From positions 3,675,324 through 3,739,323 of the forward strand of contig BDGG01000001.1 in the NCBI GenBank assembly GCA_001949185.1: a DNA stretch of 64,000 nucleotides, read 5' to 3'. Positions 14,067-31,400 of this stretch are shown one piece after another (positions within the stretch are counted from its first letter, which is position 1; each line of letters begins with the position of its first letter). The position numbers and the translations under genes are program-made. A model generated the notes under the pieces. It saw nothing but the letters and a program-made list of their open reading frames with translations. It was not told where the DNA came from and made no database searches. The stretch is from Ramazzottius varieornatus. Taxonomy: Eukaryota; Animalia; Tardigrada.

Positions 14067-15647
14067 ATGGAAGGGAACAACGATGGCCCAGTAAGAGTGG
14101 ATGGACGGTGGGACGGGTGTAAAGTGAAAATATCATCTGCCATCGAACGGTTACAAAGCCGGTGGGGATTGACGCGGATTGTCTATAAATTATTGCTGAA
14201 TATACTCTAAACATATCGTCAAAGGTTCTTCCTCTGTCAAGTCGCGGTTTCTTGTTGTAGATCGGTATGGATTCCGTTCTTACTTGGTCAGGTTTGTTCC
14301 ACGTTGCTGTGTGGGACAGCCGTTACTAGCACTTACCTCATGCAAAAGGGAGTAAACTGTCCCACAGGTACATCATATAAGCTTCGACACTCACAGCTCC
14401 GATTCTGACTGAATATTTTATTTGATTAGCACAGAGTTTCCTGAATTATCTCCTCATAGGAGTCGTCTACTCCATCGCGTTCGGCTACAAGTCTAATAAG
14501 AGCTACGGATTGTCCACCGCATTCCGAGAACGCTGGTGGAAGTACCTGATCCTAGCAGTGATCGATGTAGAAGGCAACTATCTGATGGTCAAGGCTTATC
14601 ATTACACCACCTTGACCAGTGTCCAACTGCTAGACTGCACGACTATCCCCGTTGTTCTCATCCTGTCCTGCGTCGTCCTCCAGTACAGATTCCGTGCTCT
14701 GCATTACATCGGTGTGATTCTTTGCGTCGCTGGAGCTGTCGCCATGGTCTTCGGCGACCTGTTCACCAAAAAGAGCGATGAAGAAGGTAAAGTGCCTCGT
14801 GTCACTTCCGGCTGTTTCGAGCCTTGACTAAACTTCGATTTTCGACTTTTAGGGGCCAATCGCCTAATGGGGGATTTGATGGTCTTGGGCGGATCTGTAT
14901 GCTACGGATTCTCGAACGTTGCAGAAGAGTATGTGGTCAAGACGTACTCCCGGCTGGAGTACCTTTCCTTGCTGGGCATATTCGGGAGTGTGGTCAACGG
15001 TATCCAGCTGTAAGTATTGACTCAAAGGAATCTTTGTCAATATATTCTTGACGATTAGTTACGAGCTCGTGTCTTCTTTGGGTAGAGTGGCACTTGAAAA
15101 GAATGAATTAGGAAATATCAACTGGATCGACTGGGAAATCAGTAAGGCCGAAGACCTTACTGCCGGTTAGGTCGCTGAGCTTTTTACCTTATTTCTTTTC
15201 TTCGAGGTTTATACTTTGTCCTGTTCGCGATGTTCCTCTTCGCATTGTACTCATTAGTACCGTACTTGATGAGAAAGGCCGGAGCCACAATATTCAACCT
15301 TTCCATTCTGTCTGCCGATTTCTACGCGCTGGTAGTTGGTCTCACGTTGTTCCGTTATGAGGTACGTCTTCTAAATTCCGAACCCGGAAATTATGACAAA
15401 CGTTTGGTTATGATACAGCGATGATGGGCAGTTTCTAAAGCGCCGTTGTCTGTTTCAGTTTCACTACATGTATTTCATCGGCTTCATCCTCGTCGTTTCC
15501 GGTCTCATAATATACTCTATCCAGTCACCGCGTATCCACTTATCCAACGAGGTAATGCTCGACCCGGCATCTAGCAGTATTCCAGAATGGAGTACAAAAG
15601 ATGTGGTGCTGGTGAAGTACCTCGAGCTGTACGATTCAAGAAAGTAA
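14067..15647 (+). CDS. SLC35F2: Solute carrier family 35 member F1/F2-like transporter (multi-exon)
   Basis: LGQVCSTLLCGT, PTAQSFLNY, WWKYLILAVIDVEGNYLMVKAYHYTTLTSVQLLDC, SNVAEEYVV, NLSILSADFY. Confidence 0.88.
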
Positions 15648-16020: not shown

Positions 16021-19000
16021 TTATTTGGCGACTGTTTTACGTTTCTTAACTCCGCCAGTTGGACCACCACTTAGGTAATCATCGAAAGAAGCTTCATTCG
16101 AAGAGGGCGTCGTCGCAGTCGAAGTAGAGCTCGCGGCTTTTCTTCGATCTTTCCCACCTGCATTCCTCCCCGCTATCTTGCCAGACAGTTGCTGTACAAT
16201 GTCCAGCACGGTGGGGCTGACTGTGTCTCGTTTGAAGTACAGCGCAGCCGCGACGAAGATGAGAGGAAGGACCCACATGGTGCCAGGGGTGATCTCGGGT
16301 TCCAGCTGACGTCTGGACGCCGAGAAGGGAAGAACGATGTGGCGGAATGTAACATTGGCTGTGATTGGAACGTCGGAGGGGGAATAGATAAAGTCCTTCT
16401 TGGAGAGGGTCGACTCAAGGCGAAGGAAGTACGCTCGATTGTCGAGCGGGACTGCGTTGAGGTAAAACATGGGGTTCACGGTGAAAGACACACACTGCTG
16501 AGCTTCGTCGGGTCGATCCGCCCGATACAGACACACCTATTGATATCACAGAAAGCTTAAAGCCATGCCTATCAGAATGCTGTGCTGTTTAGTGAGAAAC
16601 GAAGACACTTTCTACCTTCAAAGTTGGCAAAAATTCTTTGGTAGTTTCGATGCGTCCAGTAAACTCTGCTTCGTTAAAACCACGGAAAGCCAGGAAGGAA
16701 AGACCAACGACGTTGTCGGTGCCCATCTTGATGGTTCGGTTTGCCGGAGAGATCCACTGGATGTCGAAGCGGCCCAACTCACCAGACTTCGTTCGAACCT
16801 CGTAATCGCAACCCGCCTGCAAAACGCAGTTGGATAACTCAGTTGCTATTGAAGGAGGATTATTCGCTTGGTACCTTTAGGCCGGAAATTCTAAAGTGTC
16901 CGTCATTTCCAGTCACACATTCTTCCTGCATTTGAGGACACGGAGGCTTGCTGACAGCTTCCATGACGAGGCCGACTTCCGGGTCGCCGCCTAACGAGCT
17001 CACTTTCCCCAAGGCGCTGTAAGCTATCCGAATACCATTCCAGCTAACCTCCGCCGTCTGGCCTTGGGTCAGAGTGATCGACTTTGAGGATGGTTCGAAC
17101 TTGTACTCTTTGACCATTGGTCGCACCACATAGTCACCTGGCGCGAACGACACGAATGAGATGGTCCCCGAAGCGTCAGTCAAGTTACTCGTCCTATAAA
17201 GAAACAACAGTTGTCATTCAAGTCTAAAAAACTCGCAAGAATTTTCAACCTGGTTTTCCTTGACCAAAACCGCAAGTTACCTGACGCCAGCTGTGCTACT
17301 GATGGAAACCAGAACTCCAGGGATAGCTGCCCCATTGGCATCCAGAGTCTGGATTCGAATCTCGGAAAGCTTGACGGTCTTGAAGTTGTTGGTACCTTTC
17401 ACCCGATGGATCTGATATCCGCGCTTTTCGACGGCTATGTCTTTCAGGGACGACCGGGCAACGGGTCCAACACTATGAAACAGACAATTATGAATGTTTC
17501 GTACATCGCCTTTCCTTTGTCCGAACATAAATAACACTTTCTAGTACAAGTGACAAAGGCAAGCATTCAGTTACCTGTAGTTCCCACTGGAATCGGTTTT
17601 TCCACGTAGGACGTCGTCTTCCGTGGTAACTGTGACGTCTGCATCAGCAACAGGTGGCACGAGGCTACCGGTGATCAGTACTCCCTTGAAAGCCTCGAGT
17701 ACCAGCGTGTTCTTTTCGCAGTTGTCTGCAAAAGCACAAGCATGTTTTCGTGTGCGAGTTTTAGCAGCCTGAGCAACTTTGACCGACTACGGTTTCAGAG
17801 CAGCATAGGCCAATTTTGTAGGCGTTCAGTCAACATACCTGTAACTGAAAGCTCGGCTTGGATGGGCTTGAACAGCAGCGTCTCAGACGATGGATAAACA
17901 GTCAAGTCTTCATTAGCGGCGAAGTACTCGAGAAAGTTGTACTGGAAGAGTTCCGGAGTGATCTGTCTCGGAGAGCCGGAAGGACTAAGGATGGACGAGG
18001 AACCATCCGAGCTTTTCCTGTAAAGGCGCAAAATGAAGCGTCTAATCTAGAAAAATGTTCATAGGAAAATATTAGTATCGATAAACCATAGAACACCAAC
18101 TTGATTCGCAGTTTGAATGACATCTTATCATCATCCGTGTTGACAGAGATATTCGTCGAGTGCGCCACCGCTTGCATGCTCAGCTTCCCCGGGTTCTCCG
18201 TGTCAAACGTGTAGCTATCCTGTTCGAACTTGTGACAGGACCTCGGCTCGATGGTGTACTGCCCCGGCTTGGGCAGGCACAGCTCCGTGAACTTGCCCTT
18301 GATTGTCGCAGTCTCCGGCGATTCACTCTTCCCTTCCCCAGCCAACTTGTAACTGATCATCGTATCATGACTACTCCAGATCTCGAAGACGTACCCAGTC
18401 TGGATAAACCCAACAGTCACACTCGGCTTCGTCACTGTCAACTCAATCGTCTTCTGTACCATGTCCCAACAGGATCTCTTCGATTGCGAATCGACGATCT
18501 TGATAACATGCATACCCAGATCCACATTCGAGAACTTGAAAAACCCCACTGCTTTGTTCTCTAAACTCTCCTCGACTTTAACAAAATTCTCCCCACTTCC
18601 GGTCAGAATGGAAACTCGAAGGTCTTTTGGGCACACATTGATACACCTGATTTGTCCGGAAACTGTTCCGAGGACTTGTTCGAAAACCAAATCGGTGATT
18701 GGAAAGTCTTTCAGTTGGATGAGTTTCTCAGCGGGAGAAAAGACTAATTTCTGTTCTTTGCTATTCTGTGGCGCGTCAAAGATCGACACTTTGTGTTCAC
18801 CAGCTTCGAGCAGTATACAAAACTTTCCATCCCGTACTACCGTATCTCTGGACATACCCGTCTTGACATCCACAGCATCAAACGACACCATTCTGTTCAA
18901 CGGTCTCAACGTGGTGACGCTACCGCACACCATCATACTTCGTGCAACGACCGGAGGAATCACAGCTTCGGTTGGCGTAATCTTCGTGTACACTGTGGGG

Positions 19001-20621
19001 AAATCGTAATACTCTTTCTGGATCTCTACTTTGTACCACCCGGTGATGGTTTTGTCCAGTTGGAACTGGCCTTTCTTGTCTGTTTTGGTAGTGAGTGTAT
19101 TGTTGATGTAGACGTCAGCACTGGCAATACCTTGACCGTTCTTGGACGTCAGAACACTACCGTAAGCAGTGAAGCCTTTCACTTCGAACAGCTTCGCGAT
19201 CTCGACTGGTTCGTGGTTGACGGTGAACTCGTGGAAGGCTGGCTCAATGTCGTACTTTGTGCTACCTCCGGCGTATTCAGGGACGAGGGTGTAGCGGGAG
19301 GATGCCAAAGACCGGAAGGTAAATTTACCGGCGGAGTCGGACTTGACCGAACAAAGCAGCGTTCCGTATTGAAGGTTACCTACTTCCGCTTGATTTTCTT
19401 TCAGTTCCGGCTTCTCACACCCCCTGACATCCTGGAAAGAAACACTTCAAAATTTTAAAGCGTTTTCCACTAACTTCCGCTTCGGCTGAAGCGTTTCAGT
19501 CTAACCGAGAACTAAATGTTCTCATAGAACTGGTGTTTCAACCTGATTTCTACATTCAGGTGTTTTACCGATGGTTTTGCGGTCTTCGAGTAGAGGAGGA
19601 ACGAAACACCGCTGATGGGTTCTCCGCTGCTCTTGACGTTTCCGGTGAGAGAATATCCGTTAACCACCAGCGACTGGTCGGGAAGCTCCACATTCTCCTG
19701 TGCGACAACGACGGAGAGCTTGGGCTGGACCAGCTGGAACTGTGAGTGTGTCGCCTCCAGGGTGTATGTCCCTGGTAGCAGCCTCTTGATCTGAAACCTG
19801 GAAAAGACCACGAAAATAATTAGGGCGGAACTCAAGCTTGGTAATTGAGTTTATTAAGTACGAAATGTCATATAAAAATTTTATATTTAAGCCTACCTTC
19901 CACCACCTTCGCTCATGGTCGAAGCAACTTCCTTGCCTTTGCTGTCAGACAATTTAATGGCGACTCCAGCAGGACCTTCGGCACTACCCGCGCTCTGGAT
20001 CCGTCCTGAACACGAAAAGCCAGCGAACCGGAAATTCAAATTTTCTTGTTTCGAGCATGGATCGTTCTTTCCATCTACGTGCAGCATCAGCTGGTCCGGC
20101 TCTGCAGGAGCACGAACACATGTTCTTTATGGAAATTTGTTTGTTACAAGGTGGGAAAACAAGTTTTCGTTTGAGGATCACGAGCTTACCAAAGGATATT
20201 CCGCTGGGCGCGTGTACCGTCAAGATGAAGTCGCCTCGCTTGTCAAAAATCGGTACCTCGTAATTGCCATTGTTCGCGGAGCATCCAGTTTGATACTTCA
20301 GATTCCCATGTTTATCCAGTAGATGAACCTGCATTGAACAGACGGCATCTACATCAATCTAGTGAACCGAGTGAATTCCTATACCGCAACAGGCTCGCGG
20401 TCTCAGAGTTTTCAACTCCAATGCTGTCTCGCATTCCAGCTGGTACCAACGACGCCGTAGGACAGTCTTACCTCGATTTTGCTGTAGTCCAAAGAATACT
20501 CCGACTGGACAAAGCCTCCACAAATAACCGTATCTGAATCTTGCGCAGCACTAGGGTAGCCGGAAACGATGTATGCAAGTACGGCAACGAATGCAGAGAC
20601 ACGATCCAACTGGCTGTGCAT
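16021..20621 (-). CDS. NOMO1: Nodal modulator (NOMO)-like type I ER membrane protein (multi-exon)
   Basis: Signal peptide then ICGGFVQSEYSLDYSKIEVHL, KYQTGCSANNGNY, repeated prealbumin-like beta domains, VVRPMVKEYKFEP, C-terminal TM (MWVLPLIFVAAALYF) and KKRK tail. Confidence 0.9.
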
Positions 20622-21982
20622 TGCGAGCTCTGTAAAGCTCCCAGGCGGCGTCAACTCCACTCTCGTCTCTCCACAGTCCTACGAGCGCTCACCTGAAAGA
20701 GACAGCAACTATGGGATCCGGGAAGTTCGAGAAGAAAAAAAGGAGCAGGAGACAAAAGTAATGGACATGCACATAAAGCTGTGGAATTCAAGCCGCTATG
20801 TTCCGCACGAAGCAATCAACCAAAGTAAAATCAAGCGCACGCACTATGAGGAAAAACGATGTGACGTCACTGCAGATAAGACTGTGCATAGTATGACAAT
20901 AGTATGCTTCCAGCCAGTGGGCAGTAGAATTTTGGAGGTTCCTGAGATCTGAGCTCGAGTCTGCAAAGCATTGTGCTCCTGGCTAACTTATGTGTTGCAT
21001 TCCCGTTCTAGCCATCAAATGGGATCTGCAGAATGGCGAACATGGCGGCTGGCAAGGAAAAGGGAAAAAGCTCGTATGCGGGAGACCACTGGTGCAAGAA
21101 GATGCTCATCCCTTCGGAGATTTATCTTCGGGCAAAGAACATGAGCAGGAAAACTGCGCGGATCCCTGCTCGTAAGTACCACTTCCGCTGACATTATGCG
21201 TGGAAAGGAGATCGCTTTCTTCGTAATGCTTGATCTTCGTCTTTGGGTTGCGTTCCCCAGGTTGATGCCGGGAACGGAAAGCAAGGTACATTTCAATGTA
21301 AATATGCATTACAGCGAGGCCAAGAAAGACGAAGCGATACACGGGGGCGCCGGAGGACATTAGAAGTTCAATTATAAACACGGAGACAGTAAAGATTCCG
21401 TTTCATGAAAGACCGTTTCCATGAGTGCACCCATACAACACGCGTGTATTCAAGACTTCCGCATAACGGTCTGTAGTAACACTTCAGGATTAAATACTGT
21501 CTTTTGTGACCACACTCTTTATTCTACCTTCTTTTATGGTTCAGATACGCAAGGTGAATAAGAGCGTAATTCCCCATGACGAAAAAACAGTTTATGGTAG
21601 TGGTCGTGACTTGCAGGTGTAGGAAATCGTGCTTCATCAGCAGGTATATGGGGTTTGGTGCGTATTGAATACCAGTTTACGTAAAAGAAGGTGATGGTAT
21701 TTTGTTGTAGTAAACACCACCCATCGTTCGACGTGGACCTGACAATGGACCACTCGGAAGAGCTCCATTCAGCGACCGCAGTCATATCCATATGCTGCAA
21801 CGAACGCCGCTGCCAAGAATGCAGCTCGTCGAAAAGCCAGGTAGGTTGGTTTGTTATCGGATGACCGTAGTTTTCAGTATTCTCGCATGGCTCTTCGCGA
21901 CAAAACACTGCTACTTATTACATTAAAACACCGCTGCTGCTCGTTTAGCCGCGTGTTTGCTACGTTGTAAACCGTCACCACA

Positions 21983-24900
21983 ATGGATGGCTCCAACCAA
22001 TGTATCCTGCCGAAACTACCTGTTGTCCGGCGAAACATCACAGTTATCCAGGGAAATGTCATGTACGTTCTCTCTTAATTTCAGTACTCGAAATATTACA
22101 CACTGCGATTTGTTTGATATAGTTTACCGGTACCATGCTGGTCACTGGGTTCCCCCAGCCTCATTTACATCTACTTCCTGGTCGGTCTTGGTATTCCACT
22201 GGTCGCCATGTTATATGCCCACTTGCCGACGATCTACAGACGGATAACGGTGCTGGTAAAACAGAGATCATGGTTTCGTGGTCGGGTAGTTACCGAAGTT
22301 CGGGAAGTGGAGAAGAAGAAAAGCGAGGTCGCAGAAAAGATGGGAGTCACCCCATCCGCTGTCGATCGTATGCAGGTAAGCGTACTGGAGTCCTTGACAT
22401 TGAGCTTGCCCCCTGATTGACCGGAGGACTGTGGTCTAGCGTTTCGCTTGTTTCTGTAGGCGCTGGCCGAAGCCCGCGAAAGAAGATCCAAGCTGGCGGT
22501 GTTCCTGTCCGAAGCGTCGTCCCCGCAGACCAATATCGGGCAGCTACTGGTGCGTATCAGTGCGACTTGTCTGATATTGAATAACGAAGCTTCACCCTTT
22601 GCTTTACTCTTCTCTTTCGTCGAAGATGAGCATTGCGGTTGTCTGCAGCATGATTTCGCTGATGATCTACATGATCACGGTCGCCCGAAAGAACGAAGCA
22701 CTGGAGCTTTGTGGGACTATGCCAGACAGTCGCCAGATTGTTGACATCGTAGCGAATCTGTATCTTCTGTTTTACTTCGTCATTCGAGTGAGCAATTGAG
22801 ATAACTTTTTTCTGCGCCTGCGTAGAGTGAGTTCTTTTTGTGTTGCAGACAGCCGGTGCGGATAATAAGCAAAAGTCCTTTACGTCGATGTTTTCCATCG
22901 TCGACTACTTCACCATTCCCAGCGTCATGACTGGGGTTATATTCAACCGGTACTTCACAGGTATTATAATGGGAATTCCTTGTTGTCCGTCGAGCCGCTT
23001 TATACCCGATAATTATGTGGCATTCGCCGTACAATTAGCTGTACATTAATCCATTTTTCGCCGCAGGCTTCAACTTCTTTCGCGCGTACAACTTGCTGTG
23101 GCTAGTCGACGTCCTGCAACATCGTCGCGTTCTCCCTACGGTTAACGCCGTCCGTCTTGTAAGGCTGATTGTTTTGGTCTGGGCCATCATCATCATTGCA
23201 TCCGGCTTTCTTCATGCGGTACTGTAAACAACTCTTCGAAAATCAATCCTACATTCAGATGTCTGGCCAAGACCTCATTACTGTAATTTGACTCCCTAGG
23301 CAGAGAATATGGGCGATCCTTGGCTGACGGACACCGACGGCACCCCGTTGTACAACGGCCAAAACATAGTCTTTTGGCGCTGTTTCCTTTACGTCTATGG
23401 GCGCATAACTTTGCTGGACCTCAGTCGCTTGAGAATGCATACTATGCTCGGGAAGATCATCATCTACGGTTTCCAAATTCTGGCGCTGGTAACAAAAAGG
23501 CCATGAGAATATAACGACAAGTCTGTAACATGACTCGTGGGCAGATGAATGAACCGGATCGTTTTTCCAAGCGGCGCACACTTCCAGCCAATGACAATGA
23601 GAACCTGCGCTACTTGGGATGGCGATTTGGCCAGTTTCATTTGTCCAGGCCGTAATGTTATATGTTATGATGAGCTTGGTGGCTTGACCGTCTTGTTTGT
23701 AGGGTATTGTGGCGCAAGCGATACCTCAAATTGTCGCCAGGTTGAAAGTGAAGCCCGACTATGATCGAGACTACTCCGGTAGTAATATGTTTATGTAAGG
23801 ATTACCAAGTATTTCTTTGCGCTCGTACGGGGTCCTCAAGTCGGCGCTAACAATGATCTGCCTATAAAGAACAAGTGCAGAGGATGTCCACCGTTTATGT
23901 TGCAGTCACGTCATTGTGTGTGGTCACGTCACAACCATCACAATGGAGGACTTCCTGAAGGAATTCTACGTGAGTTCGGCCCATCGGAATTACTGTATGC
24001 TTATTTCGTTTTCGAGTAAGGGCTGGTTTCGATTTTCAGCATCCTGACCGTGGTACCAACGAGTTCTTCAAGATAGTCGTGCTTTACGAGTAAGGGGTCC
24101 TCTGTGGAAAACCTTCTGTATGAAGTGATGACTGCATGAAGTCCCTTGCAGGCAGCCACCTACAGAAGACATGGAAATTCTACAAGAACGGTACTTCGGT
24201 AAATTGGACTACTTGCGAGGATCGGTGCTGAATATGAAGGACCTCAACCGGGCCAAACTAGCCGAAGCCAAAGCTACGTTGATTCTGGCCAACCGGATGG
24301 CACCAGACGCCGACGCGGACGACTCGGCTAACATCATGAGGGTATAAGGTTGCTGAGAACTAGAAAATTAATTTACTCACGTCTGGTTCAATGAGGTGAT
24401 AACAAGGTCTATCATGACGTTCGGCATCACCTCGGACTTTTCTGACAGGTCGGTTCTGGTGTCGTTTCGCAGGTGGTTTCCATCAAGAACTACAAAGCTG
24501 ATGCCCAAGTCATCGTGCAACTCTCAATGTATCATAATAAATTTGGACTTCAGAACATACCTAGCTGGAGTCCCGAGAGAGGAGATATCGTTATTTGTCT
24601 GGCGGAACTACGCTTAGGTCAGCCGCATAAGCAGGATTTGGATTATTTAACCAAAATCAATTCTTAAAAACGTTTTGCTGAAGGTTTACAAGTATTGCGA
24701 ATATAGGTCTGCTGGCTCAAAGCTGCATAGCTCCTGGGTTCTCCACCCTGTTGGCCAATTTTGTCACAACCAGGTCCTTCGACCCTGACTTCCAGTACAA
24801 GGAAGAGTGGATGGAGCTGTATTGTCGGGGAGCCTCGCTGGAAATGTACACGCGCCCGCTCAGTAGCGCATTCGTCGGCATGTCCTTTAGCGAGGCTTGT

Positions 24901-27900
24901 GACTTTTGCTTCCGGGTCATGAAGATCGTCCTGTGCGCCATTCAGACTGAGCCCACCAAAAATCCTCAAATATTGCCACCACCATCGGTTAAGATAATAC
25001 CAGGTAACGTTAAACTGGCGATCAGATTTCCGCCGCAGTCTTCGCGCAAAGACACTGCGCTGAAGCCTTTTCTTCCAGGTACCATGGGATATTTTATCGC
25101 CGACAACACGGTACAGGTGGACAGGGCGCAGATTTACTGTACGCAGTGTCATATGAATGTCGATAACGTCGAAGACATCAAAATGTGCAGCTGTACACCC
25201 GGTGAGAACTTAGTGATCCAAAAAGCATACCATGCATTCGTTTGGGACCTTTGACAAGTACTGTGTGTTTGGGGAATTTTGTCTTCAGAACAAAAAGCGA
25301 GCGGACCTACCATCGGCAAGCTGGTTACACGCACAGCAGATCTGGCCAAGCAGCTGACATCGACCCCAGAAGACATTATTGAGTCCAGAGTGTGGAGCTA
25401 TATCAAATCGTTTGACCGTTCGCCGACGGGCAGCGTGAAAGATCTGTCGAAAGACAGCGAGTCACCAGTATCCAACGAAGGCCACCGTCCTACGAAGGTC
25501 TACGATTCCACAGGTGAGCTTTTGGCTGAGACAGGTTTTTGGGCGTCCCTTCCCAAAACTAACGTTTGTGTTTTACATTCAGGAATGTTCCATTGGTGTC
25601 CAGCTAGGCCTATTTCCGCCGTTACGATAGTGAGCGAATAATAGACCTGTTTCGCAAGTCACGTTTCGGCTCTGAATAGAATAAAATCTCATGATTTTAT
25701 ACTATGAGATTTTATACTGTGTCAGTTTCTGTGCAGAAACCGTTTCGCGGTTTGCTCACTTCCGGCACAGAATATTAGCATAAAGGGATATTAGGCCGCG
25801 CGAGTTCAGCAGGGCATCGGAATTCGCGGGTCCTGTCATTTAGCCCTCTACTGGATAAAGCCCGGACTTCTTTCGCTTTTTCTGGCGATAGTTTCGGGAA
25901 GACAATTCTCTTCCTAACTTCAATGCTAGTTTTGGTCGAAAACATGATGGATTTCGAGAAGGAACGAGAGCGGAAGTCGAGTGGCGCAATGTGGGAGAGG
26001 CGTGTAGCTCGGATCACTTGACGCGCCAAGTCCAATTCGCTGATTGGTCTGATCACGCTCCACTCCACCAAAATTTCAAATTTCGACCAAAGTGGTCAAT
26101 AGTACAATCAACTCAACTTGCACAGAATTTGAAATTCTGTGCAGCGATATTAGGCAAAACATAAGCCGTGGATAACTGCACAGCATAAAACCTATACTTA
26201 TGCTGTCCAAGCCGAAAACATGACTTGCGAAACAGGTTCAATGTACCCATTTCGACTTCCGTAATATAACCTATGTTTCTGATTTCGGTAGAGTCGTCGA
26301 AAAGCAGCTATAGGCATCTTCAAGAACCACGTTGTCGTGTGTGTCTTGTCACAGCCGAATTCTCAGATAACTGGCCTTGCTTCGTTCGTCCTTCCACTAA
26401 GATCTAGCGTCATCAAAGCTGACAACCTGCAAGATATTATCCTGTTGTGCGATCCGAAATACCTAGAGAAAGAGTGGATTTACCTTTACAACTTACCGAA
26501 ATTACACGTTGTAAAAGTGAGCAGTTTAGAAATCAATTGTCGTTTCCGGTGTCTGTTTCTTGCATTTCCAGTATGAATAATCCGGACTTTCTCTGTAGGG
26601 AACTGCCTTGAATCGTTCCGATCTTCGCAGTGTTAACTTGCCCACATGTAAAATGTGCGTTATCCTGGGAGCCCCGACTTCCAACGAGAAGTTTACTGAT
26701 CCCACCATGATGGACAAGGCTGTGATCTTGGCCACGCTCAATGTGCGTGCAATGAAGTTCTCGGAGGAGGAAGGAATGGTCTCTGACGAAGAAGACGATG
26801 TCCGCCAAAAATCGTCGGCGAGCAACTCGCCCCGAAACCACGCACATTCGTCGAATAAACGGCACTCAGTCGTTTCCCACCGAAGAACCGGCTATGATGT
26901 ACCGGTCATCACCGATTTGAGTGAGTCGATCCACTCCTAAAAATTCTCCGCTAATCAAGCAGTCTCGATTACATGTGCACCATCTTTCAGCGAGGGATTC
27001 CAACGTTCAGTTCCTGGATGACCAAGATGAGGACCTCCCGGGCACAGAATTCTACTTGACACAGCCATACACTGGTGGACGAGCGTTCACAGCTAGCGTG
27101 CTGGACCTATTGATGTAATTCAGACGAGTTCTATTGAAATGATGGTGCCTGATTGACGACAAGGAATTCCATTCGGTTGACAAATCTGTTACAGGGTGAC
27201 ATCTTTCTTCAATCCGACAGTGGTGAAAAGTATTCACGCAATCATCTTCGGCGGTGCGTCACTTGAGCTGGAAAGGATTATGGCCGAAGGTGCAGGCTTG
27301 ATCGGCGGAGACAACATTTCCCGGCCAGCAAAGAACAAGGACCAAGTTAGCGTCATGCAGCTGGACATCAAAAACGGACCTCTTTCCCTCCATGCGGTAC
27401 TCCATGCTAAACATGACTCCCTATGATTCAATACGATTTCACACGGGATATATCTTTTCACAGGGCGGAACGTATGGCGACTTGTTCATCGATGCACTTA
27501 CACACATGGGTGTGCTGGTACTCGGTCTCTACCGCCGGCTAGAACCACACGGCGAAAAGCGCTACGTCATCAGCAATCCACCGGACACCCTGGAAATACT
27601 GGAAGACGACCAAGTCTTCGCCCTGAAACGGGCCAACTTTGAATATCCCCCTGGTTCACGGTTTTCGATGATAAAAAAGAAGAAGCCGTCCAAGAACCCT
27701 GCGGCGCTGGAAGAGAAGTTGCAAGACTTGGGAGCCAACGTTGCCCAAGTGGAAGAACGGTACGACAACCTGGTTCGAGCTGAGATACATGCCAGGAACA
27801 GTCTGATCGAACTGGAGAAGAACCCGTCGGAGAATCAACCGCTTCTCGGGGTGAGTGACAAAGGACTTCCTGACCAACTGACCATACAGCTCGAACGGGA

Positions 27901-28078
27901 GAAAATATTGCTTAACGAAGAGCTCCGTATGATGGAACAGAAACTCGCCAGTATAAAGCGGGATGTGGCGACTATGCAAGAACTATACGGTGGACGTAAT
28001 GGCAATGCCAGCGTCAGGAAGCACAAAAGATACGAACCAACCACGTTCGTCAGTAAGCGACGAAGTACCGAACTGTGA
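21983..28078 (+). CDS. Slo/BK (KCNMA1/slowpoke)-family channel, divergent paralogue with non-canonical pore
   Basis: S0 helix; [10 protein letters not shown]; ENMGDPW; HVIVCGHV; [15 protein letters not shown]; [19 protein letters not shown]-like motif ([19 protein letters not shown]); [26 protein letters not shown]; YDSTGMFHWCP; [11 protein letters not shown]...YLTQPY; GVLVLGLYR; [11 protein letters not shown] 21983 has an upstream in-frame stop. Confidence 0.93.
25640..26242. mobile_element. Non-autonomous DNA element (MITE) in an intron of the Slo gene
   Basis: atagacctgtttcgcaagtcacgtttcggc versus reverse complement of gccgaaaacatgacttgcgaaacaggttcaat; accounts for this intron being about tenfold longer than its neighbours. 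Confidence 0.8.
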
Positions 28079-28473
28079 GAACAGATTTGGTCTTGGTTTC
28101 TTGTTGTTAAGATATTTACTGAGAAAAAATAACAAAAGCAAGCAACAATACTGCAGTCGTCTCGCGTCACGTTTGAGCAAAATGGTATACAAAATGTAGA
28201 TACGCGGTAAAATAGGTAAAGACGACACAAAAAAGGCAAATTGGTCCGTCTGTAAACGAGGCAAACTGATATACAGTACAAACCCGCCTTCAATAACGCT
28301 TCAAAATATCGTCAAGGAAGACGACGCGAGCATCTTGAACTTACAAAACTGAGAAAATGAAGGACACTATAAAAAACGCAGAAATCCAGTTTTACAGGAT
28401 AAGAAATACTAAAAGTCTCTGTCGCGTATTTGGTTTGCAAGCTTGAAGCGGCTTTCGTTCCGGAAGAGGCAGA

Positions 28474-31400
28474 TCATACAATGATTTCTCGTATTACTTT
28501 CCGCCCTCTCGAGTTACTTGTTGAGTAGCCGCTTTCCAGGCTTTCTTCTCCGAACGATGGAGTCTTTTCGTATTCTTCATATGGATCCGGAAGTCCATTG
28601 ACTTCCACCGGCATTTGCGTGTAGTTCGACTCTGTAAGATCATCCCACGTAAGAAAGAATTTCCGCCTCTAGTTTGAACGTCCTAAAACATACCTAAAGG
28701 AGAATGCTGGTGTCCGTATCCCTCATCGTAGCTCGGATACGACTGCATGTAGGTGTTTCCAGTGGAGTACACTGCGCCATTATGGTCCATCATGTGAGGC
28801 TTGTAGTGGTTATTGGTTTCCATTAGGCTTTGGTTATAGTTTCCGGCTGCTTGCGAGTACAGCAGACCTATAGGCAGAAGGAAGCAATCAATCGAAAGCT
28901 CAAAACTTTACTTCTAACAAGTTTTTCTTACCGTTTGAGTAAGGTGAGTTGTCCATGTAGGTCGGTGGAAGTTTGGCCGATGCATGCGATGCGTAAATCT
29001 GACCGCCAGTCTCATGCAGATGCTTGTCGGCATAACCATCCGCGTAGAACCCAGCGTCGTTCTCGTGCTGGGAGCTGCCAGTGGACGCCAGTGTCAAGTT
29101 GGATGTCTTGGCCACTTTGATGGGTGTCCTTCGACTGCGCCTTCTGCACATGATAAAGATCATACAGGAGACTAGGCCGAGTGCCAGGATGAGGACGATG
29201 GGCAGGATGATGTCCAAGCGAGGAGCGGCCGCAGTGGAAGCTTGCTGAAGAACGGTGTTCTCGTCGACAAACGGCCCACAGACCGTCTGGCTGTTGTAGG
29301 CGCAGTAGCGCAGTCGGACTTGTTGAGGTTGAGCGGGGCCAGCGATGCGGTAGGAACCTTGGTTATTTTTCAGCGGGACGCAACGGGAAATGGGGGTCCA
29401 GGTGTTGGCTTTCAGGACCTCCACCATCGCACACAGTTCTTGGACCTAAAAAAAATACCCAGCTTACAGAAAACAAGTTATCGCTACTATTTTAGTACTA
29501 CTCTTAACATTTTTCTACAGTAATTCCTCATTTAATTGTGTTATTCAATGTCTAGAGCTGTGTCTTCGAATGGGGTATAATGATATACCTTGGGTGATTC
29601 TTTGACGGCAAAGTTGACAGTGCCGCTCGATGCATCGTACTTCAGCGAGGAAGGAAAGGGAATATCTTCCGGTAGAACAGGCTTGACTGGTGTAATGATG
29701 TCGATATTCTCGCTCGTTCCCTTACTATGACCCAGCTGGTTCTCGGAACGCAGCTTAAAAGTGTACGAATTCATCGGCACTAAGCCCGTTACCCTATACT
29801 CCGACACGTCAGACCCGATGGGATATTCTTGGCCACTTCCATCGGGGCGAGTCATAACCACTGTGAACTTTTGCGGGTATCCACCGTCGAAACCAGAGTC
29901 CCAGGTCAGCGTCACTGCGTTGTAGGCCAAGTCTTTCTGCTTGAGGTTCCTTGCTGGTTCGGGGATGCTTCGTCGAACCAAGTTGAACGTTTTACTGTTG
30001 TCACCGATGAGGTTCTTGGCTGAGCACTGGTATTCCCCCAGGTCCGACTCGTCAGGTTGGTCAATGGTCAGCACAATCTTGTAGGTTTCAGCCGAGATGT
30101 TCTGGACAGCTTCGACGCGAAGGCGACCAGTGAAGGACTGGATGGGTTGGTTGTTGCGGGACCAGGTGATGGTAGGCTCGGGGTTGCTTTCCACTAAGCA
30201 CTCCAGCTTGGCGCTGGCTTGTGGGGATACATCCGTAGCGATATGGCTGTGTCGATTCACGAATTCCGGCGGGTCTACAGGGAACGTAACACACTGAATA
30301 TGGACACAGAAGAAGATGAGAAAGTGGTCGGACGGACTTACACATGATCTGCAGATGGCTTTCATGCACAATGGGCTGACCAGCATCGTTGATCGCCTTG
30401 CACTGATAGCGACCTCTGTCCGTTCGTTGGAGTGTGTCGTTCGAAGAAAACAGTTCCGTACGTGCTGGTCCTTCGAACTGCAGCTCGCTTCGTGTGACAA
30501 AGGAGTACCTACAAGTACGGCGAAAACGAAATCAGACATTATCCAAACCAAGGTAACATACTTCCGTCTTTCACCTCCTACATACTCATGCACTGTGAGG
30601 AATGTCCAGTACACTGCATGTAGGTGCTTGACAGACTATGGATACTGCATAAACTTCGATGTTACCTGTCAACGATGCCCGGTTCGGCAGTGGCAACTTT
30701 ATAGAATTTGTCATCTTCCGGGATCTGCACACCATCTTTCAGCCAGACGAACGATGGTGCAGGTCGGCCTCTGGCTGCGCAACTTAAGCTCATGGGCTTC
30801 TCGGAGATCTTTCTTACGATGGTGGGTTGGAACGCGTTATCGCTGGTCCACGAGACGGCTTCGCTAACTTCGACTGTGATCACTTTCGGAGTACCTTCTC
30901 CAATTTCGTTGAAAGGTGTGCATTCGTAGTCACCGTTGTCGTCCAGCTTCGCATCGGTCAGGTTAAAGTACTGTCCACTTGCAGCAATACCGTTTCGTCC
31001 ATCGAGCTTGCGCCATCTGAACTGGGCAGCCGGAAGTCCAGCGTCGGGAGCCGAGCAGCGCAGCGAGATGACGTTACCGACGGTTGCGCGAGGAGCCACT
31101 GGATCGATGATGGCATCTCCGGGACGATCTGTAGTGGGACAAACAAAGCGTTAGCAAATACTAGCCAGAAAATATACAGAAAATCATTTTTCGACAAATA
31201 TTGACGAATACTTTAAACTTTTACTTCAATAATATTTTCGTACTGAATATTGTCTTATATTTCTGACTACGGTTATTTTCACTTACATTGAACATCAATT
31301 TTGGCACTTCCTCGTCCTTCACGCGTCGCTTTCACACCATTAGACATTTCAAAAACAACTTTGACGCGGCATTCATAGACACCACCTTCGGGTCGTTTAA

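What the first reader, a model, noticed from the sequence alone, without database searches (positions are those of the whole stretch)
23300..23488. Slo/BK-family channel whose K+ selectivity filter TVGYG is replaced by LLDLS
Seen: the pore exon reads [27 protein letters not shown] and aligns without gaps to Slo1 [27 protein letters not shown]. The ORF looks otherwise intact across about 20 exons, and I found no alternative GYG exon in the flanking introns. Established: TxGYG/TxGFG is essentially invariant in K+ channels. Inference: not a K+ channel. It could be a Ca2+-gated channel of new selectivity (an Asp sits in the filter, loosely as in Ca2+/non-selective cation pores), a non-conducting Ca2+ sensor, or a dominant modulatory subunit for canonical Slo1.
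Basis: partly seen in the sequence, partly recalled or inferred. Interest (0 to 1): 0.88.

Follow-up and report, generated by a model that had tools for sequence, protein, structure and literature searches.

The report
Tardigrade BK-like channels without potassium filter
This tardigrade gene encodes a complete BK/Slo-type calcium-gated channel whose potassium-selecting loop (TVGYGD) reads TLLDLS instead, and the same altered loop is strictly conserved in five paralogues and in three tardigrade species, so it is a maintained new pore type, not a broken gene.

Summary
Window 23300-23488 (+) is exon 7 of an intact 21-exon, 1249-aa Slo1/BK-like gene (ATG 21983, TGA 28078). It reads TLLDLS where Slo1 has TVGYGD, in an ungapped profile alignment to solved BK structures (E 3e-15). 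No alternative GYG exon exists in 19000-31000.

New here:
- The genome is Ramazzottius varieornatus, with 12 Slo-like genes. Five carry (T/S)(L/M)(L/I)DLS, one carries TLGSAD and six carry GYG.
- 1:1 orthologues in Hypsibius exemplaris and Paramacrobiotus metropolitanus carry the same motif. They are publicly named ordinary BK channels.
- The LDLS clade is monophyletic and was found only in tardigrades among 1.84 billion representative proteins.
- The pore helix and loop are among the most conserved parts of the protein, with synonymous sites saturated (pS 0.7-0.97, pN 0.08-0.24).
- The gating-ring domains and the Ca-bowl acidic pattern are kept. Two of three S4 arginines and the inner-mouth glutamates are lost.

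A pseudogene is excluded. The most likely reading is a Ca2+-gated tetrameric channel that cannot form a canonical K+ filter. What it conducts, if anything, is untested.

The scan's first readers had flagged two paralogues of this gene elsewhere in the same genome.

The parts
21983..22062 (+). exon 1, start codon ATG at 21983
   Evidence: 80% identical to residues 1-20 of the H. exemplaris orthologue P0125. In-frame stop upstream. GT donor.
22123..22375 (+). exon 2: S0 helix and part of the S0-S1 linker
22460..22549 (+). exon 3: linker and start of S1
22626..22787 (+). exon 4: S1-S2
   Evidence: 57% identical to P0125. Splice sites.
22849..22960 (+). exon 5: S3
23067..23218 (+). exon 6: S4 and S5. 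S4 reads F-N-F-F-R-A-Y-N, so only the middle of Slo1's three arginines is kept (R codon at 23081-23083).
23300..23488 (+). exon 7, the finding: turret, pore helix, filter loop and first half of S6
23408..23425 (+). the six filter codons T320-L-L-D-L-S325, in the position of Slo1 T-V-G-Y-G-D
23703..23794 (+). exon 8: second half of S6 and the linker. It reads A-I-P-Q-I-V-A where Slo1 has Y-V-P-E-I-I-E, so the inner-mouth glutamates are lost.
23906..24617 (+). exons 9-12 (23906-23969, 24040-24089, 24152-24341, 24473-24617): RCK1
   Evidence: Pfam Slo-like_RCK. Splice sites.
24707..25003 (+). exon 13: BK_channel_a domain
   Evidence: Pfam PF03493, E 4e-23.
25079..25629 (+). exons 14-16 (25079-25201, 25298-25513, 25583-25629): end of RCK1 and the poorly conserved RCK1-RCK2 linker. 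The acceptor of exon 15 is uncertain (25298, 25289 or 25259).
   Evidence: Linker conservation is 0.42.
26292..26920 (+). exons 17-18 (26292-26516, 26599-26920): RCK2, following an unusually long 662-nt intron
   Evidence: Pfam Slo-like_RCK..
26991..27114 (+). exon 19, with the Ca-bowl [14 protein letters not shown] at 27008-27049
   Evidence: 90% identical to P0125. Acidic pattern compared with canonical Slo1.
27195..28078 (+). exons 20-21 (27195-27396, 27464-28078): Slowpoke_C domain, C-terminal tail, stop codon TGA at 28076-28078
   Evidence: Pfam PF21014..

Best explanation
The window holds an intact, selectively maintained member of a tardigrade-specific clade of Slo1-derived proteins. 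This gene belongs to orthogroup A, one of five such genes in Ramazzottius varieornatus.

After a duplication of a Slo gene in the tardigrade lineage, the pore helix and filter were remodelled once, from [10 protein letters not shown] to Y-G-(R/K)-x-(T/S)-(L/M)-(L/I)-D-L-S. The new sequence has been held nearly invariant since.

What is kept: the seven-helix Slo membrane layout, a P-loop (pore helix, extended loop, S6), the tandem RCK gating ring and the acidic Ca-bowl pattern.

What is lost: two of the three S4 arginines and the ring of glutamates at the inner mouth.

Most likely it still assembles as a tetramer and is opened by intracellular Ca2+, with little voltage dependence. Its pore cannot adopt the canonical four-site K+ filter, so it passes something other than a K+-selective current. 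My preferred guess is a cation pathway shaped by a ring of four aspartates between leucine rings, non-selective or permeable to divalent ions.

Shown: the gene structure, the clade, the conservation and the retained and lost motifs. Inferred: tetramer formation, Ca2+ gating, conduction and selectivity.
For: Gene:
- 21 GT-AG exons and 1249 aa, with no stop or frameshift. The protein is 62% identical to its H. exemplaris orthologue OQV15848.
- Pfam Slo-like_RCK twice, BK_channel_a and Slowpoke_C.

Filter:
- Ungapped profile alignment to BK structures, E 3e-15.
- No alternative GYG exon.

Clade:
- Four more loci in this genome carry the same motif.
- Orthologues in H. exemplaris and P. metropolitanus carry it too.
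- Further exon pieces of unknown source also carry it. D-L-S is invariant in all 18 sequences seen.
- Among the 119 hits at E <= 0.001 from 1.84 billion representatives, every named protein with this motif is a tardigrade protein. All non-tardigrade hits have GYG or GFG.
- In the ML tree the LDLS clade has SH-aLRT 99, and 100 with the pore columns removed. Three orthogroups follow the species tree, and the filter type needs only one change for LD.

Selection:
- In the 20-codon pore block, pS is 0.70-0.97 against pN 0.08-0.24 between paralogues.
- Across nine clade members, exon 7 is the second most conserved exon, and the pore helix plus filter is the third most conserved 20-residue stretch. 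S6 is also in the top ten.
- The window gene's branch (0.33) is no longer than its orthologues' branches.

Retained parts:
- Ca-bowl Q-F-L-D-x-x-D-x-D and the A-E-L-(R/K)-L-G stretch of RCK1 are kept.
- An AF2 model of paralogue D has pTM 0.70. It shows a pore helix, an 11-residue loop and S6 at pLDDT about 80-90, and its best structural matches are Slo1 chains at E 1e-70.

Lost parts:
- S4 keeps one arginine in all clade members.
- The inner glutamates are replaced.
- Pfam Ion_trans and Ion_trans_2 no longer match clade members, but do match a GYG tardigrade Slo and a wasp slowpoke.
Against:
- Nothing here measures conduction, selectivity, Ca2+ binding or assembly.
- The homotetramer prediction for the pore domain gave no answer, which is not evidence either way.
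- The structure model is of a paralogue, as a monomer, and its alignment included canonical Slo1 sequences, so it may simply copy the BK fold.
- Strong conservation of the loop would also fit a purely structural or regulatory role.
- The window gene alone has R-L after D-L-S where nearly all relatives have G-M. The effect of this is unknown.
- The public R. varieornatus protein for this gene did not appear in the searches, so its current annotation is unknown.
Confidence: 0.5

Rival explanations
1. Non-conducting Slo-derived subunit. The protein keeps the Ca2+-sensing gating ring and the membrane scaffold, but the pore is closed for good. It would act as a Ca2+ sensor or scaffold, or co-assemble with GYG-bearing Slo paralogues of the same animal and silence or modulate them.
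For: - Leucines at both glycine positions are expected to abolish the K+ filter (established knowledge).
- Pore-dead K+ channel subunits are dominant negative in heteromers (established knowledge).
- The genome also has six GYG-bearing Slo genes that could be partners.
- The gating ring and Ca-bowl are conserved.
- The loss of S4 charges and inner-mouth glutamates fits a protein no longer tuned for ion throughput.
Against: - A merely broken pore has no reason to keep one exact sequence. Yet D-L-S, the Y-G before it and much of S6 are invariant or nearly so across paralogues that have saturated synonymous sites.
- The clade has radiated into at least 5 genes per species and evolves more slowly than some GYG paralogues. 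That suggests functions of its own.
- No evidence of co-assembly was obtained.
Confidence: 0.3
2. Still a K+-preferring channel that selects by a non-canonical mechanism, for example a hydrophobic constriction as in TMEM175, or a shortened filter using the threonine and the first leucine carbonyl.
For: - The threonine at the base of the filter is kept in 17 of 18 sequences (S in the other).
- The P-loop architecture is predicted to persist.
- K+ selectivity without GYG is known in TMEM175 (recalled from memory, not tested here).
Against: - All five other signature positions differ, and the outer aspartate of GYGD is a serine.
- There is no sequence similarity to any known non-GYG K+ filter.
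- The conductance-promoting glutamates of BK are gone.
Confidence: 0.12
3. Decaying or artefactual gene: a pseudogene, a mis-assembled exon, or a gene that really uses another pore exon.
For:
- The window copy has a private R-L after the motif.
Against: - Open frame over 21 exons with consensus splice sites.
- 1:1 orthologues in two other genera carry the same motif.
- pN is far below pS in the pore block.
- No other pore-like exon exists within 19000-31000.
- The motif is present independently at five loci of this assembly.
Confidence: 0.03

Closest known systems
Slo1 / BK channel alpha subunit (KCNMA1, Drosophila slowpoke, C. elegans SLO-1; structures 5tj6, 6v22, 7pxe)
   Same: - S0-S6 layout and a P-loop between S5 and S6.
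- Tandem RCK1-RCK2 gating ring with BK_channel_a and Slowpoke_C domains.
- Ca-bowl acidic pattern.
- About 30% identity, and Foldseek E 1e-70 for a paralogue's model.
   Different: - The filter is T-L-L-D-L-S instead of T-V-G-Y-G-D, and the pore helix is rewritten to end in Y-G-R.
- The pore-helix glutamate (W-E-C) is arginine or lysine.
- S4 keeps one arginine out of three, and the inner-mouth glutamates are lost.
- Pfam Ion_trans and Ion_trans_2 no longer match.
Slo3 (KCNU1)
   Same: A Slo1-derived paralogue with a changed filter (GFG) and altered gating ligand. A turtle KCNU1 sits among the canonical sequences in the tree.
   Different: Slo3 keeps both glycines and remains a K+ channel. It is a vertebrate duplication unrelated to the tardigrade clade.
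NaK and CNG-type non-selective tetrameric cation channels (NaK filter T-V-G-D-G)
   Same: An aspartate sits where K+ channels have the tyrosine, and a threonine is kept at the base of the filter. This resemblance is recalled from memory and was not tested here.
   Different: NaK and CNG channels keep glycines in the loop, while here both are leucines. There is no sequence relationship beyond the general P-loop fold, and the cytosolic domains differ.
Electrically silent Kv subunits (Kv5, Kv6, Kv8, Kv9) and engineered pore-dead GYG-to-AAA subunits
   Same: Channel-family members that need not conduct by themselves and can modulate or silence relatives. This is a functional analogy only.
   Different: Natural silent Kv subunits keep GYG. 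The engineered ones are not conserved natural genes.
The second tardigrade variant, T-L-G-S-A-D / T-I-G-S-P-D Slo paralogues (G000 C2 ~279 kb; OQV20958; XP_055333001)
   Same: A tardigrade Slo paralogue with a non-canonical filter, conserved in the same three species.
   Different: It is a separate branch of the tree, with an independent change of the filter that keeps the first glycine.

Membership tests
Slo/BK family (Slo1-like) | Tandem RCK1-RCK2 cytosolic gating ring with the BK_channel_a and Slowpoke_C domains | tested here: met
   Pfam on window exons: Slo-like_RCK in two places (E 1e-10 each), BK_channel_a at E 4e-23, Slowpoke_C at E 5e-12. The same domains are found in the full-length orthologue P0125.
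Slo/BK family (Slo1-like) | S0-S6 membrane domain homologous to Slo1 | tested here: met
   The S4-S5-pore profile matches BK chains at E 3e-15. The exons are colinear with the orthologue from S0 onward. The AF2 model of paralogue D shows the helices and matches Slo1 chains at E 1e-70.
Slo/BK family (Slo1-like) | Ca-bowl acidic cluster in RCK2 (Q-F-L-D-Q-D-D-D-D-D) | tested here: met
   The window reads Q-F-L-D-D-Q-D-E-D at 27008-27034. The first aspartate and the D-x-D pair are kept, in register with canonical sequences. Ca2+ binding itself is not testable here.
Slo/BK family (Slo1-like) | K+ signature filter T-V-G-[YF]-G-D | tested here: not met
   T-L-L-D-L-S at 23408-23425. No other pore exon exists.
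Slo/BK family (Slo1-like) | S4 with three arginines (R-F-L-R-A-L-R) | tested here: not met
   N-F-F-R-A-Y-N: only the middle arginine is kept, in all clade members.
Slo/BK family (Slo1-like) | K+-selective, Ca2+- and voltage-activated conductance | not testable with these tools
   This needs electrophysiology.
Tetrameric P-loop cation channels (Pfam Ion_trans / Ion_trans_2) | Match to the Pfam pore-domain models | tested here: not met
   P0125 and P0131 match neither model at E <= 0.01. Tardigrade GYG paralogue P0058 and wasp slowpoke P0035 match both.
Tetrameric P-loop cation channels (Pfam Ion_trans / Ion_trans_2) | Re-entrant pore helix plus extended loop between two membrane helices | tested here: met
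   In the AF2 model of paralogue D, read against its sequence, the pore helix is 361-373, the loop 374-384 and S6 385-412, with pLDDT of about 80-90. It is a monomer model of a paralogue, so the support is indirect.
Tetrameric P-loop cation channels (Pfam Ion_trans / Ion_trans_2) | Assembly as a tetramer around a central pore | tested here: inconclusive
   Complex prediction with four copies of P0125 residues 226-372 returned 'no answer'.
Pseudogene | Stops, frameshifts, lost splice sites or relaxed constraint | tested here: not met
   Intact 1249-codon frame with GT-AG introns. pN 0.08-0.24 against pS 0.70-0.97. The branch is no longer than the orthologues' branches.

The most novel reading that the evidence does not exclude
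Tardigrades turned a BK-type K+ channel scaffold into a new kind of Ca2+-gated pore. Its selectivity filter would be a ring of four aspartates flanked by leucine rings (Y-G-R-x-T-L-L-D-L-S), conducting non-selective cation or divalent (Ca2+) current. The type then radiated into at least five genes per species. It would be a natural, conserved case of a K+ channel re-engineered into another ion pathway, and possibly part of tardigrade-specific physiology.
Probability: 0.35. Interest if true: 0.88.

Novelty: new variant of a known kind. Interest (0 to 1): 0.75.

Why it matters
The T-x-G-[YF]-G signature is treated as a near-universal requirement of K+ channels, and BK is one of the best-studied channels.

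A whole clade of otherwise complete BK-like proteins has swapped that signature for a different, equally invariant motif. It has kept the new motif through at least the split of two eutardigrade superfamilies.

This is a natural experiment in how a pore can be re-purposed on a fixed gating scaffold. It gives a directly testable question, namely what a T-L-L-D-L-S loop conducts, using proteins that can be expressed and solved with standard BK methods.

It also matters for annotation. Public records name these proteins 'calcium-activated potassium channel', which is probably wrong as to the ion. The reported 'duplication of a calcium-activated potassium channel' in tardigrade genomes (PMC5531438) in fact mixes GYG and non-GYG genes.

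Tried and rejected
The source species of the unnamed Logan and ENA exon pieces (P0003-P0007, P0009) stays unknown. I showed only that P0004 and P0009 are read-through frames in which the pore exon alone matches, so they are not transcripts.
- Pore exon alone against solved structures: no hit at E <= 1. It was superseded by the profile search.
- Complex prediction, four copies of the orthologue's S5-S6 (P0125 226-372): 'no answer', score 0.00. This is no evidence for or against.
- The search for homologous proteins with P0002 returned only two proteins, because the candidate cap filled. Neither that search nor one search returned the public R. varieornatus model of the window gene.
- The tree with the mixture model did not finish in time. 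LG+G4 'quick' trees were used instead, so support values are SH-aLRT only.
- ESM Atlas look-alikes of the pore region pointed only to Slo-like or K+ channel fragments (best score 0.90, a lead only) and to no other family.
- Literature searches found no description of a GYG-less Slo clade. The one relevant line is in PMC5531438. Its supplements gave nothing on these genes.
- The joined 21-exon model was built and used only inside local scripts, for alignment, conservation and trees. Those tools received exons by reference or public orthologue and paralogue ids.
- Rejected readings: alternative GYG exon, pseudogene, reading-frame artefact.
Full report
**Observation.** The stretch is bounded by an AG acceptor and a GT donor and is exactly one exon, 23300-23488. 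The six codons at 23408-23425 read T-L-L-D-L-S.

**Is it a Slo pore?** The exon alone is too short and too changed to hit any solved structure at E <= 1. A profile of the S4-S5-pore segments of this gene and its paralogues (alignment A1) matches Aplysia, human and Drosophila BK chains at E 3e-15 to 1e-11. That alignment is ungapped through the pore and places t-l-l-d-l-s on T-V-G-F/Y-G-D.

A profile of canonical Slo pores finds this exon (E 6e-6) and nothing else in 19000-31000. No T-x-G-[YF]-G occurs there in any frame, so there is no hidden alternative pore exon.

**Gene.** The window exons hit Slo-like_RCK twice, BK_channel_a and Slowpoke_C. I used the Hypsibius exemplaris orthologue found later (P0125 = OQV15848) as a guide to resolve the junctions.

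- The gene has 21 exons, all with GT-AG introns. Twenty introns are 60-214 nt and one is 662 nt.
- It runs from ATG at 21983 to TGA at 28076-28078, 1249 codons, with no stop or frameshift.
- Only the acceptor of exon 15, in the poorly conserved RCK1-RCK2 linker, is ambiguous.

The joined model was used only in local scripts. It was not sent to any search or fold tool, which received exons by reference or public protein ids.

**Whose genome.** The assembly has 55.84 Mb in 200 contigs. One paralogue is letter for letter GAV00740, RvY_11543-3 of Ramazzottius varieornatus.

**It is a family, not one gene.** A search of the own genome with the pore exon finds four more loci whose pore exons are 59-74% identical and carry the same replacement:

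| Locus | Filter |
|---|---|
| C6 ~88 kb | T-L-L-D-L-S |
| C6 ~1.57 Mb (RvY_11543) | T-L-L-D-L-S |
| C2 ~544 kb | T-L-I-D-L-S |
| C1 ~5.53 Mb (RvY_01959, P0131) | S-M-L-D-L-S |

All four are colinear with their orthologues over the available length.

The 14 BK_channel_a hits correspond to 12 genes. Their filters are as follows:
- five LDLS genes;
- one T-L-G-S-A-D gene (C2 ~279 kb);
- six GYG genes, among them a conventional Slo1-like gene at C6 ~424 kb with S-T-V-G-Y-G-D and an R-F-T-R-A-L-R S4.

**Distribution.** Profile A1 was run against 1.84 billion representative proteins and gave 119 hits at E <= 0.001.

- The eight best hits that cover the pore have T-L-(L/I)-D-L-S.
- Four very divergent 'uncharacterized' proteins have Y-G-K-L-V-x-L-D-(L/V)-T.
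- Two have T-(L/I)-G-S-(A/P)-D.
- All other hits that cover the filter have G-Y-G or G-F-G, apart from three with a gapped or truncated loop.

The named variant proteins all come from R. varieornatus, H. exemplaris or Paramacrobiotus metropolitanus. Their public names are 'calcium-activated potassium channel subunit alpha-1', 'slowpoke' or 'slo-1-like'. The unnamed ones are single exon pieces from Logan or ENA contigs. I found no non-tardigrade protein with this motif.

**Phylogeny.** An ML tree of 37 Slo proteins (LG+G4, SH-aLRT) makes the ten LDLS proteins one clade, with support 99, and 100 when the pore columns are removed.

- Inside the clade are three clean orthogroups in which R. varieornatus and H. 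exemplaris are sisters and P. metropolitanus is outside.
- The window gene pairs with OQV15848 (62% identity) and then with XP_055331309.
- The duplications, and therefore the remodelled filter, predate the split of Hypsibioidea and Macrobiotoidea.
- The divergent P. metropolitanus L-D-(L/V)-T group joins the LDLS clade in the best tree (97 with pore columns, 77 without). The filter states need only two changes on the tree, one for LD and one for GS.
- That group has no R. varieornatus orthologue.

**Selection.** In the 20 codons from F-W to two residues past D-L-S, the five R. varieornatus paralogues differ at 70-97% of synonymous sites but at only 8-24% of non-synonymous sites. The same leucines, glycine and serine are written with different codons.

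- Across nine full-length clade members, exon 7 is the second most conserved of the 21 exons (mean 0.73, with 32% invariant columns).
- The pore helix plus filter is the third most conserved 20-residue stretch in the protein. The S6 segment is also in the top ten.
- Y-G and D-L-S are invariant.
- The window gene's terminal branch (0.33) equals those of its orthologues (0.36, 0.29). The clade evolves more slowly than one of the GYG paralogue pairs.
- One private feature: the window copy has R-L after D-L-S, where nearly all relatives have G-M.

**What is kept and what is lost.**

Kept:
- The Ca-bowl pattern: Q-F-L-D-D-Q-D-E-D here against Q-F-L-D-Q-D-D-D-D in canonical Slo1, with the first aspartate and the D-x-D pair in register.
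- The A-E-L-(R/K)-L-G and D-A-(D/E)-D-A-x-N-I-M-R-V stretches of RCK1.
- The G-D-P-W turret start.

Lost or changed:
- S4 has one arginine instead of three in every clade member.
- Y-V-P-E-I-I-E of S6 is A-I-P-Q-I-V-A.
- The pore-helix W-E-C is W-(R/K)-C, and a second basic residue precedes the filter.
- Pfam Ion_trans and Ion_trans_2 fail on clade members but match a GYG tardigrade paralogue and a wasp slowpoke.

**Structure.** An AlphaFold2 model of paralogue D (P0131, 35-row alignment) has pTM 0.70.

- It shows S5 (311-340), a pore helix (361-373), an 11-residue loop holding M-L-D-L-S (374-384) and S6 (385-412), with pLDDT of about 80-90.
- Foldseek ranks Slo1 structures first (E 1e-70). 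The gating ring alone reaches TM 0.93-0.94.
- This is a monomer model of a paralogue, built with canonical sequences in the alignment, so it shows only that the P-loop layout is compatible.
- A homotetramer prediction of the orthologue's pore domain gave no answer.

**Interpretation.** The gene is real, complete and under purifying selection, so the pseudogene reading is excluded.

Both glycines of G-Y-G are leucines. The first glycine of the signature needs a backbone geometry that L-residues disfavour (established knowledge), so the canonical four-site K+ filter cannot form.

A merely dead pore would have no reason to hold one exact sequence, together with S6, across old paralogues. I therefore favour a pore that still does something specific. 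The scaffold argues for Ca2+ gating with weak voltage dependence.

What passes through is inference. Four aspartates between leucine rings are reminiscent of carboxylate-ring cation and Ca2+ pores and of NaK's T-V-G-D-G; both resemblances are from memory. The rivals are a non-conducting sensor or modulatory subunit, and a non-canonical K+ filter. None can be decided without recordings.

**Prior knowledge.** Full-text searches found no description of a GYG-less Slo clade. Yoshida et al. 2017 (PMC5531438) remark only that 'a calcium-activated potassium channel' was duplicated in both tardigrades.

Within this scan, first readers had flagged two paralogues in the same genome. Note s1-812295 is the C1 5.53 Mb pore exon, which I re-read myself. 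Note s1-794842 lies on another contig.

**Not done.** Codon-based dN/dS between orthologues was not computed, for lack of their coding DNA. No functional test was possible.

Noticed in passing
L021 (G000:C2:271000-280999), minus strand, pore exon about L021:8043-8273: A second non-canonical Slo filter in the same genome, T-L-G-S-A-D instead of T-V-G-Y-G-D. It is conserved as T-L-G-S-A-D in H. exemplaris OQV20958 and T-I-G-S-P-D in P. metropolitanus XP_055333001. It lies on a separate branch of the tree, so the GYG loss is independent.
   Followed up: partly
Proteins P0051, P0083, P0087, P0097 (P. metropolitanus XP_055356806, XP_055343068, XP_055350993, XP_055350982): Four very divergent 'uncharacterized' Slo-like proteins with Y-G-K-L-V-x-L-D-(L/V)-T in the filter position. 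They group with the LDLS clade and have no orthologue in R. varieornatus.
   Followed up: partly
L030:256-2667 (G000:C2:540256-542667): Slo-like C-terminal segments (matching residues 870-1192 of P0128 at 50-69% identity) lie just upstream of paralogue C. They may be a partial tandem copy or the end of a further gene not picked up by the BK_channel_a search.
   Followed up: no
G000 loci L022-L026 and L031: R. varieornatus has six GYG-bearing Slo-like genes besides the variants. Some tardigrade GYG paralogues (for example RvY_16557, P0047) have lost the Ca-bowl acidic cluster and evolve fast.
   Followed up: partly
window 25630-26291: Intron 16 of the gene is 662 nt, against 60-214 nt for the other twenty introns. 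No channel-like coding potential was detected in it.
   Followed up: partly
window 14426-15644 (+): The upstream neighbour is a multi-exon SLC35F-family transporter gene (Pfam PF06027, E 3e-39 and 3e-14 on two exons).
   Followed up: partly
contig sizes reported for P0125/P0130, P0126/P0127, P0128/P0025 and P0129/P0037: Linkage hints. Orthogroups A and B share a contig in H. exemplaris and in P. metropolitanus, but lie on different scaffolds (C1, C6) in R. varieornatus. Group C and the G-S-A gene share a contig or scaffold in all three species.
   Followed up: no
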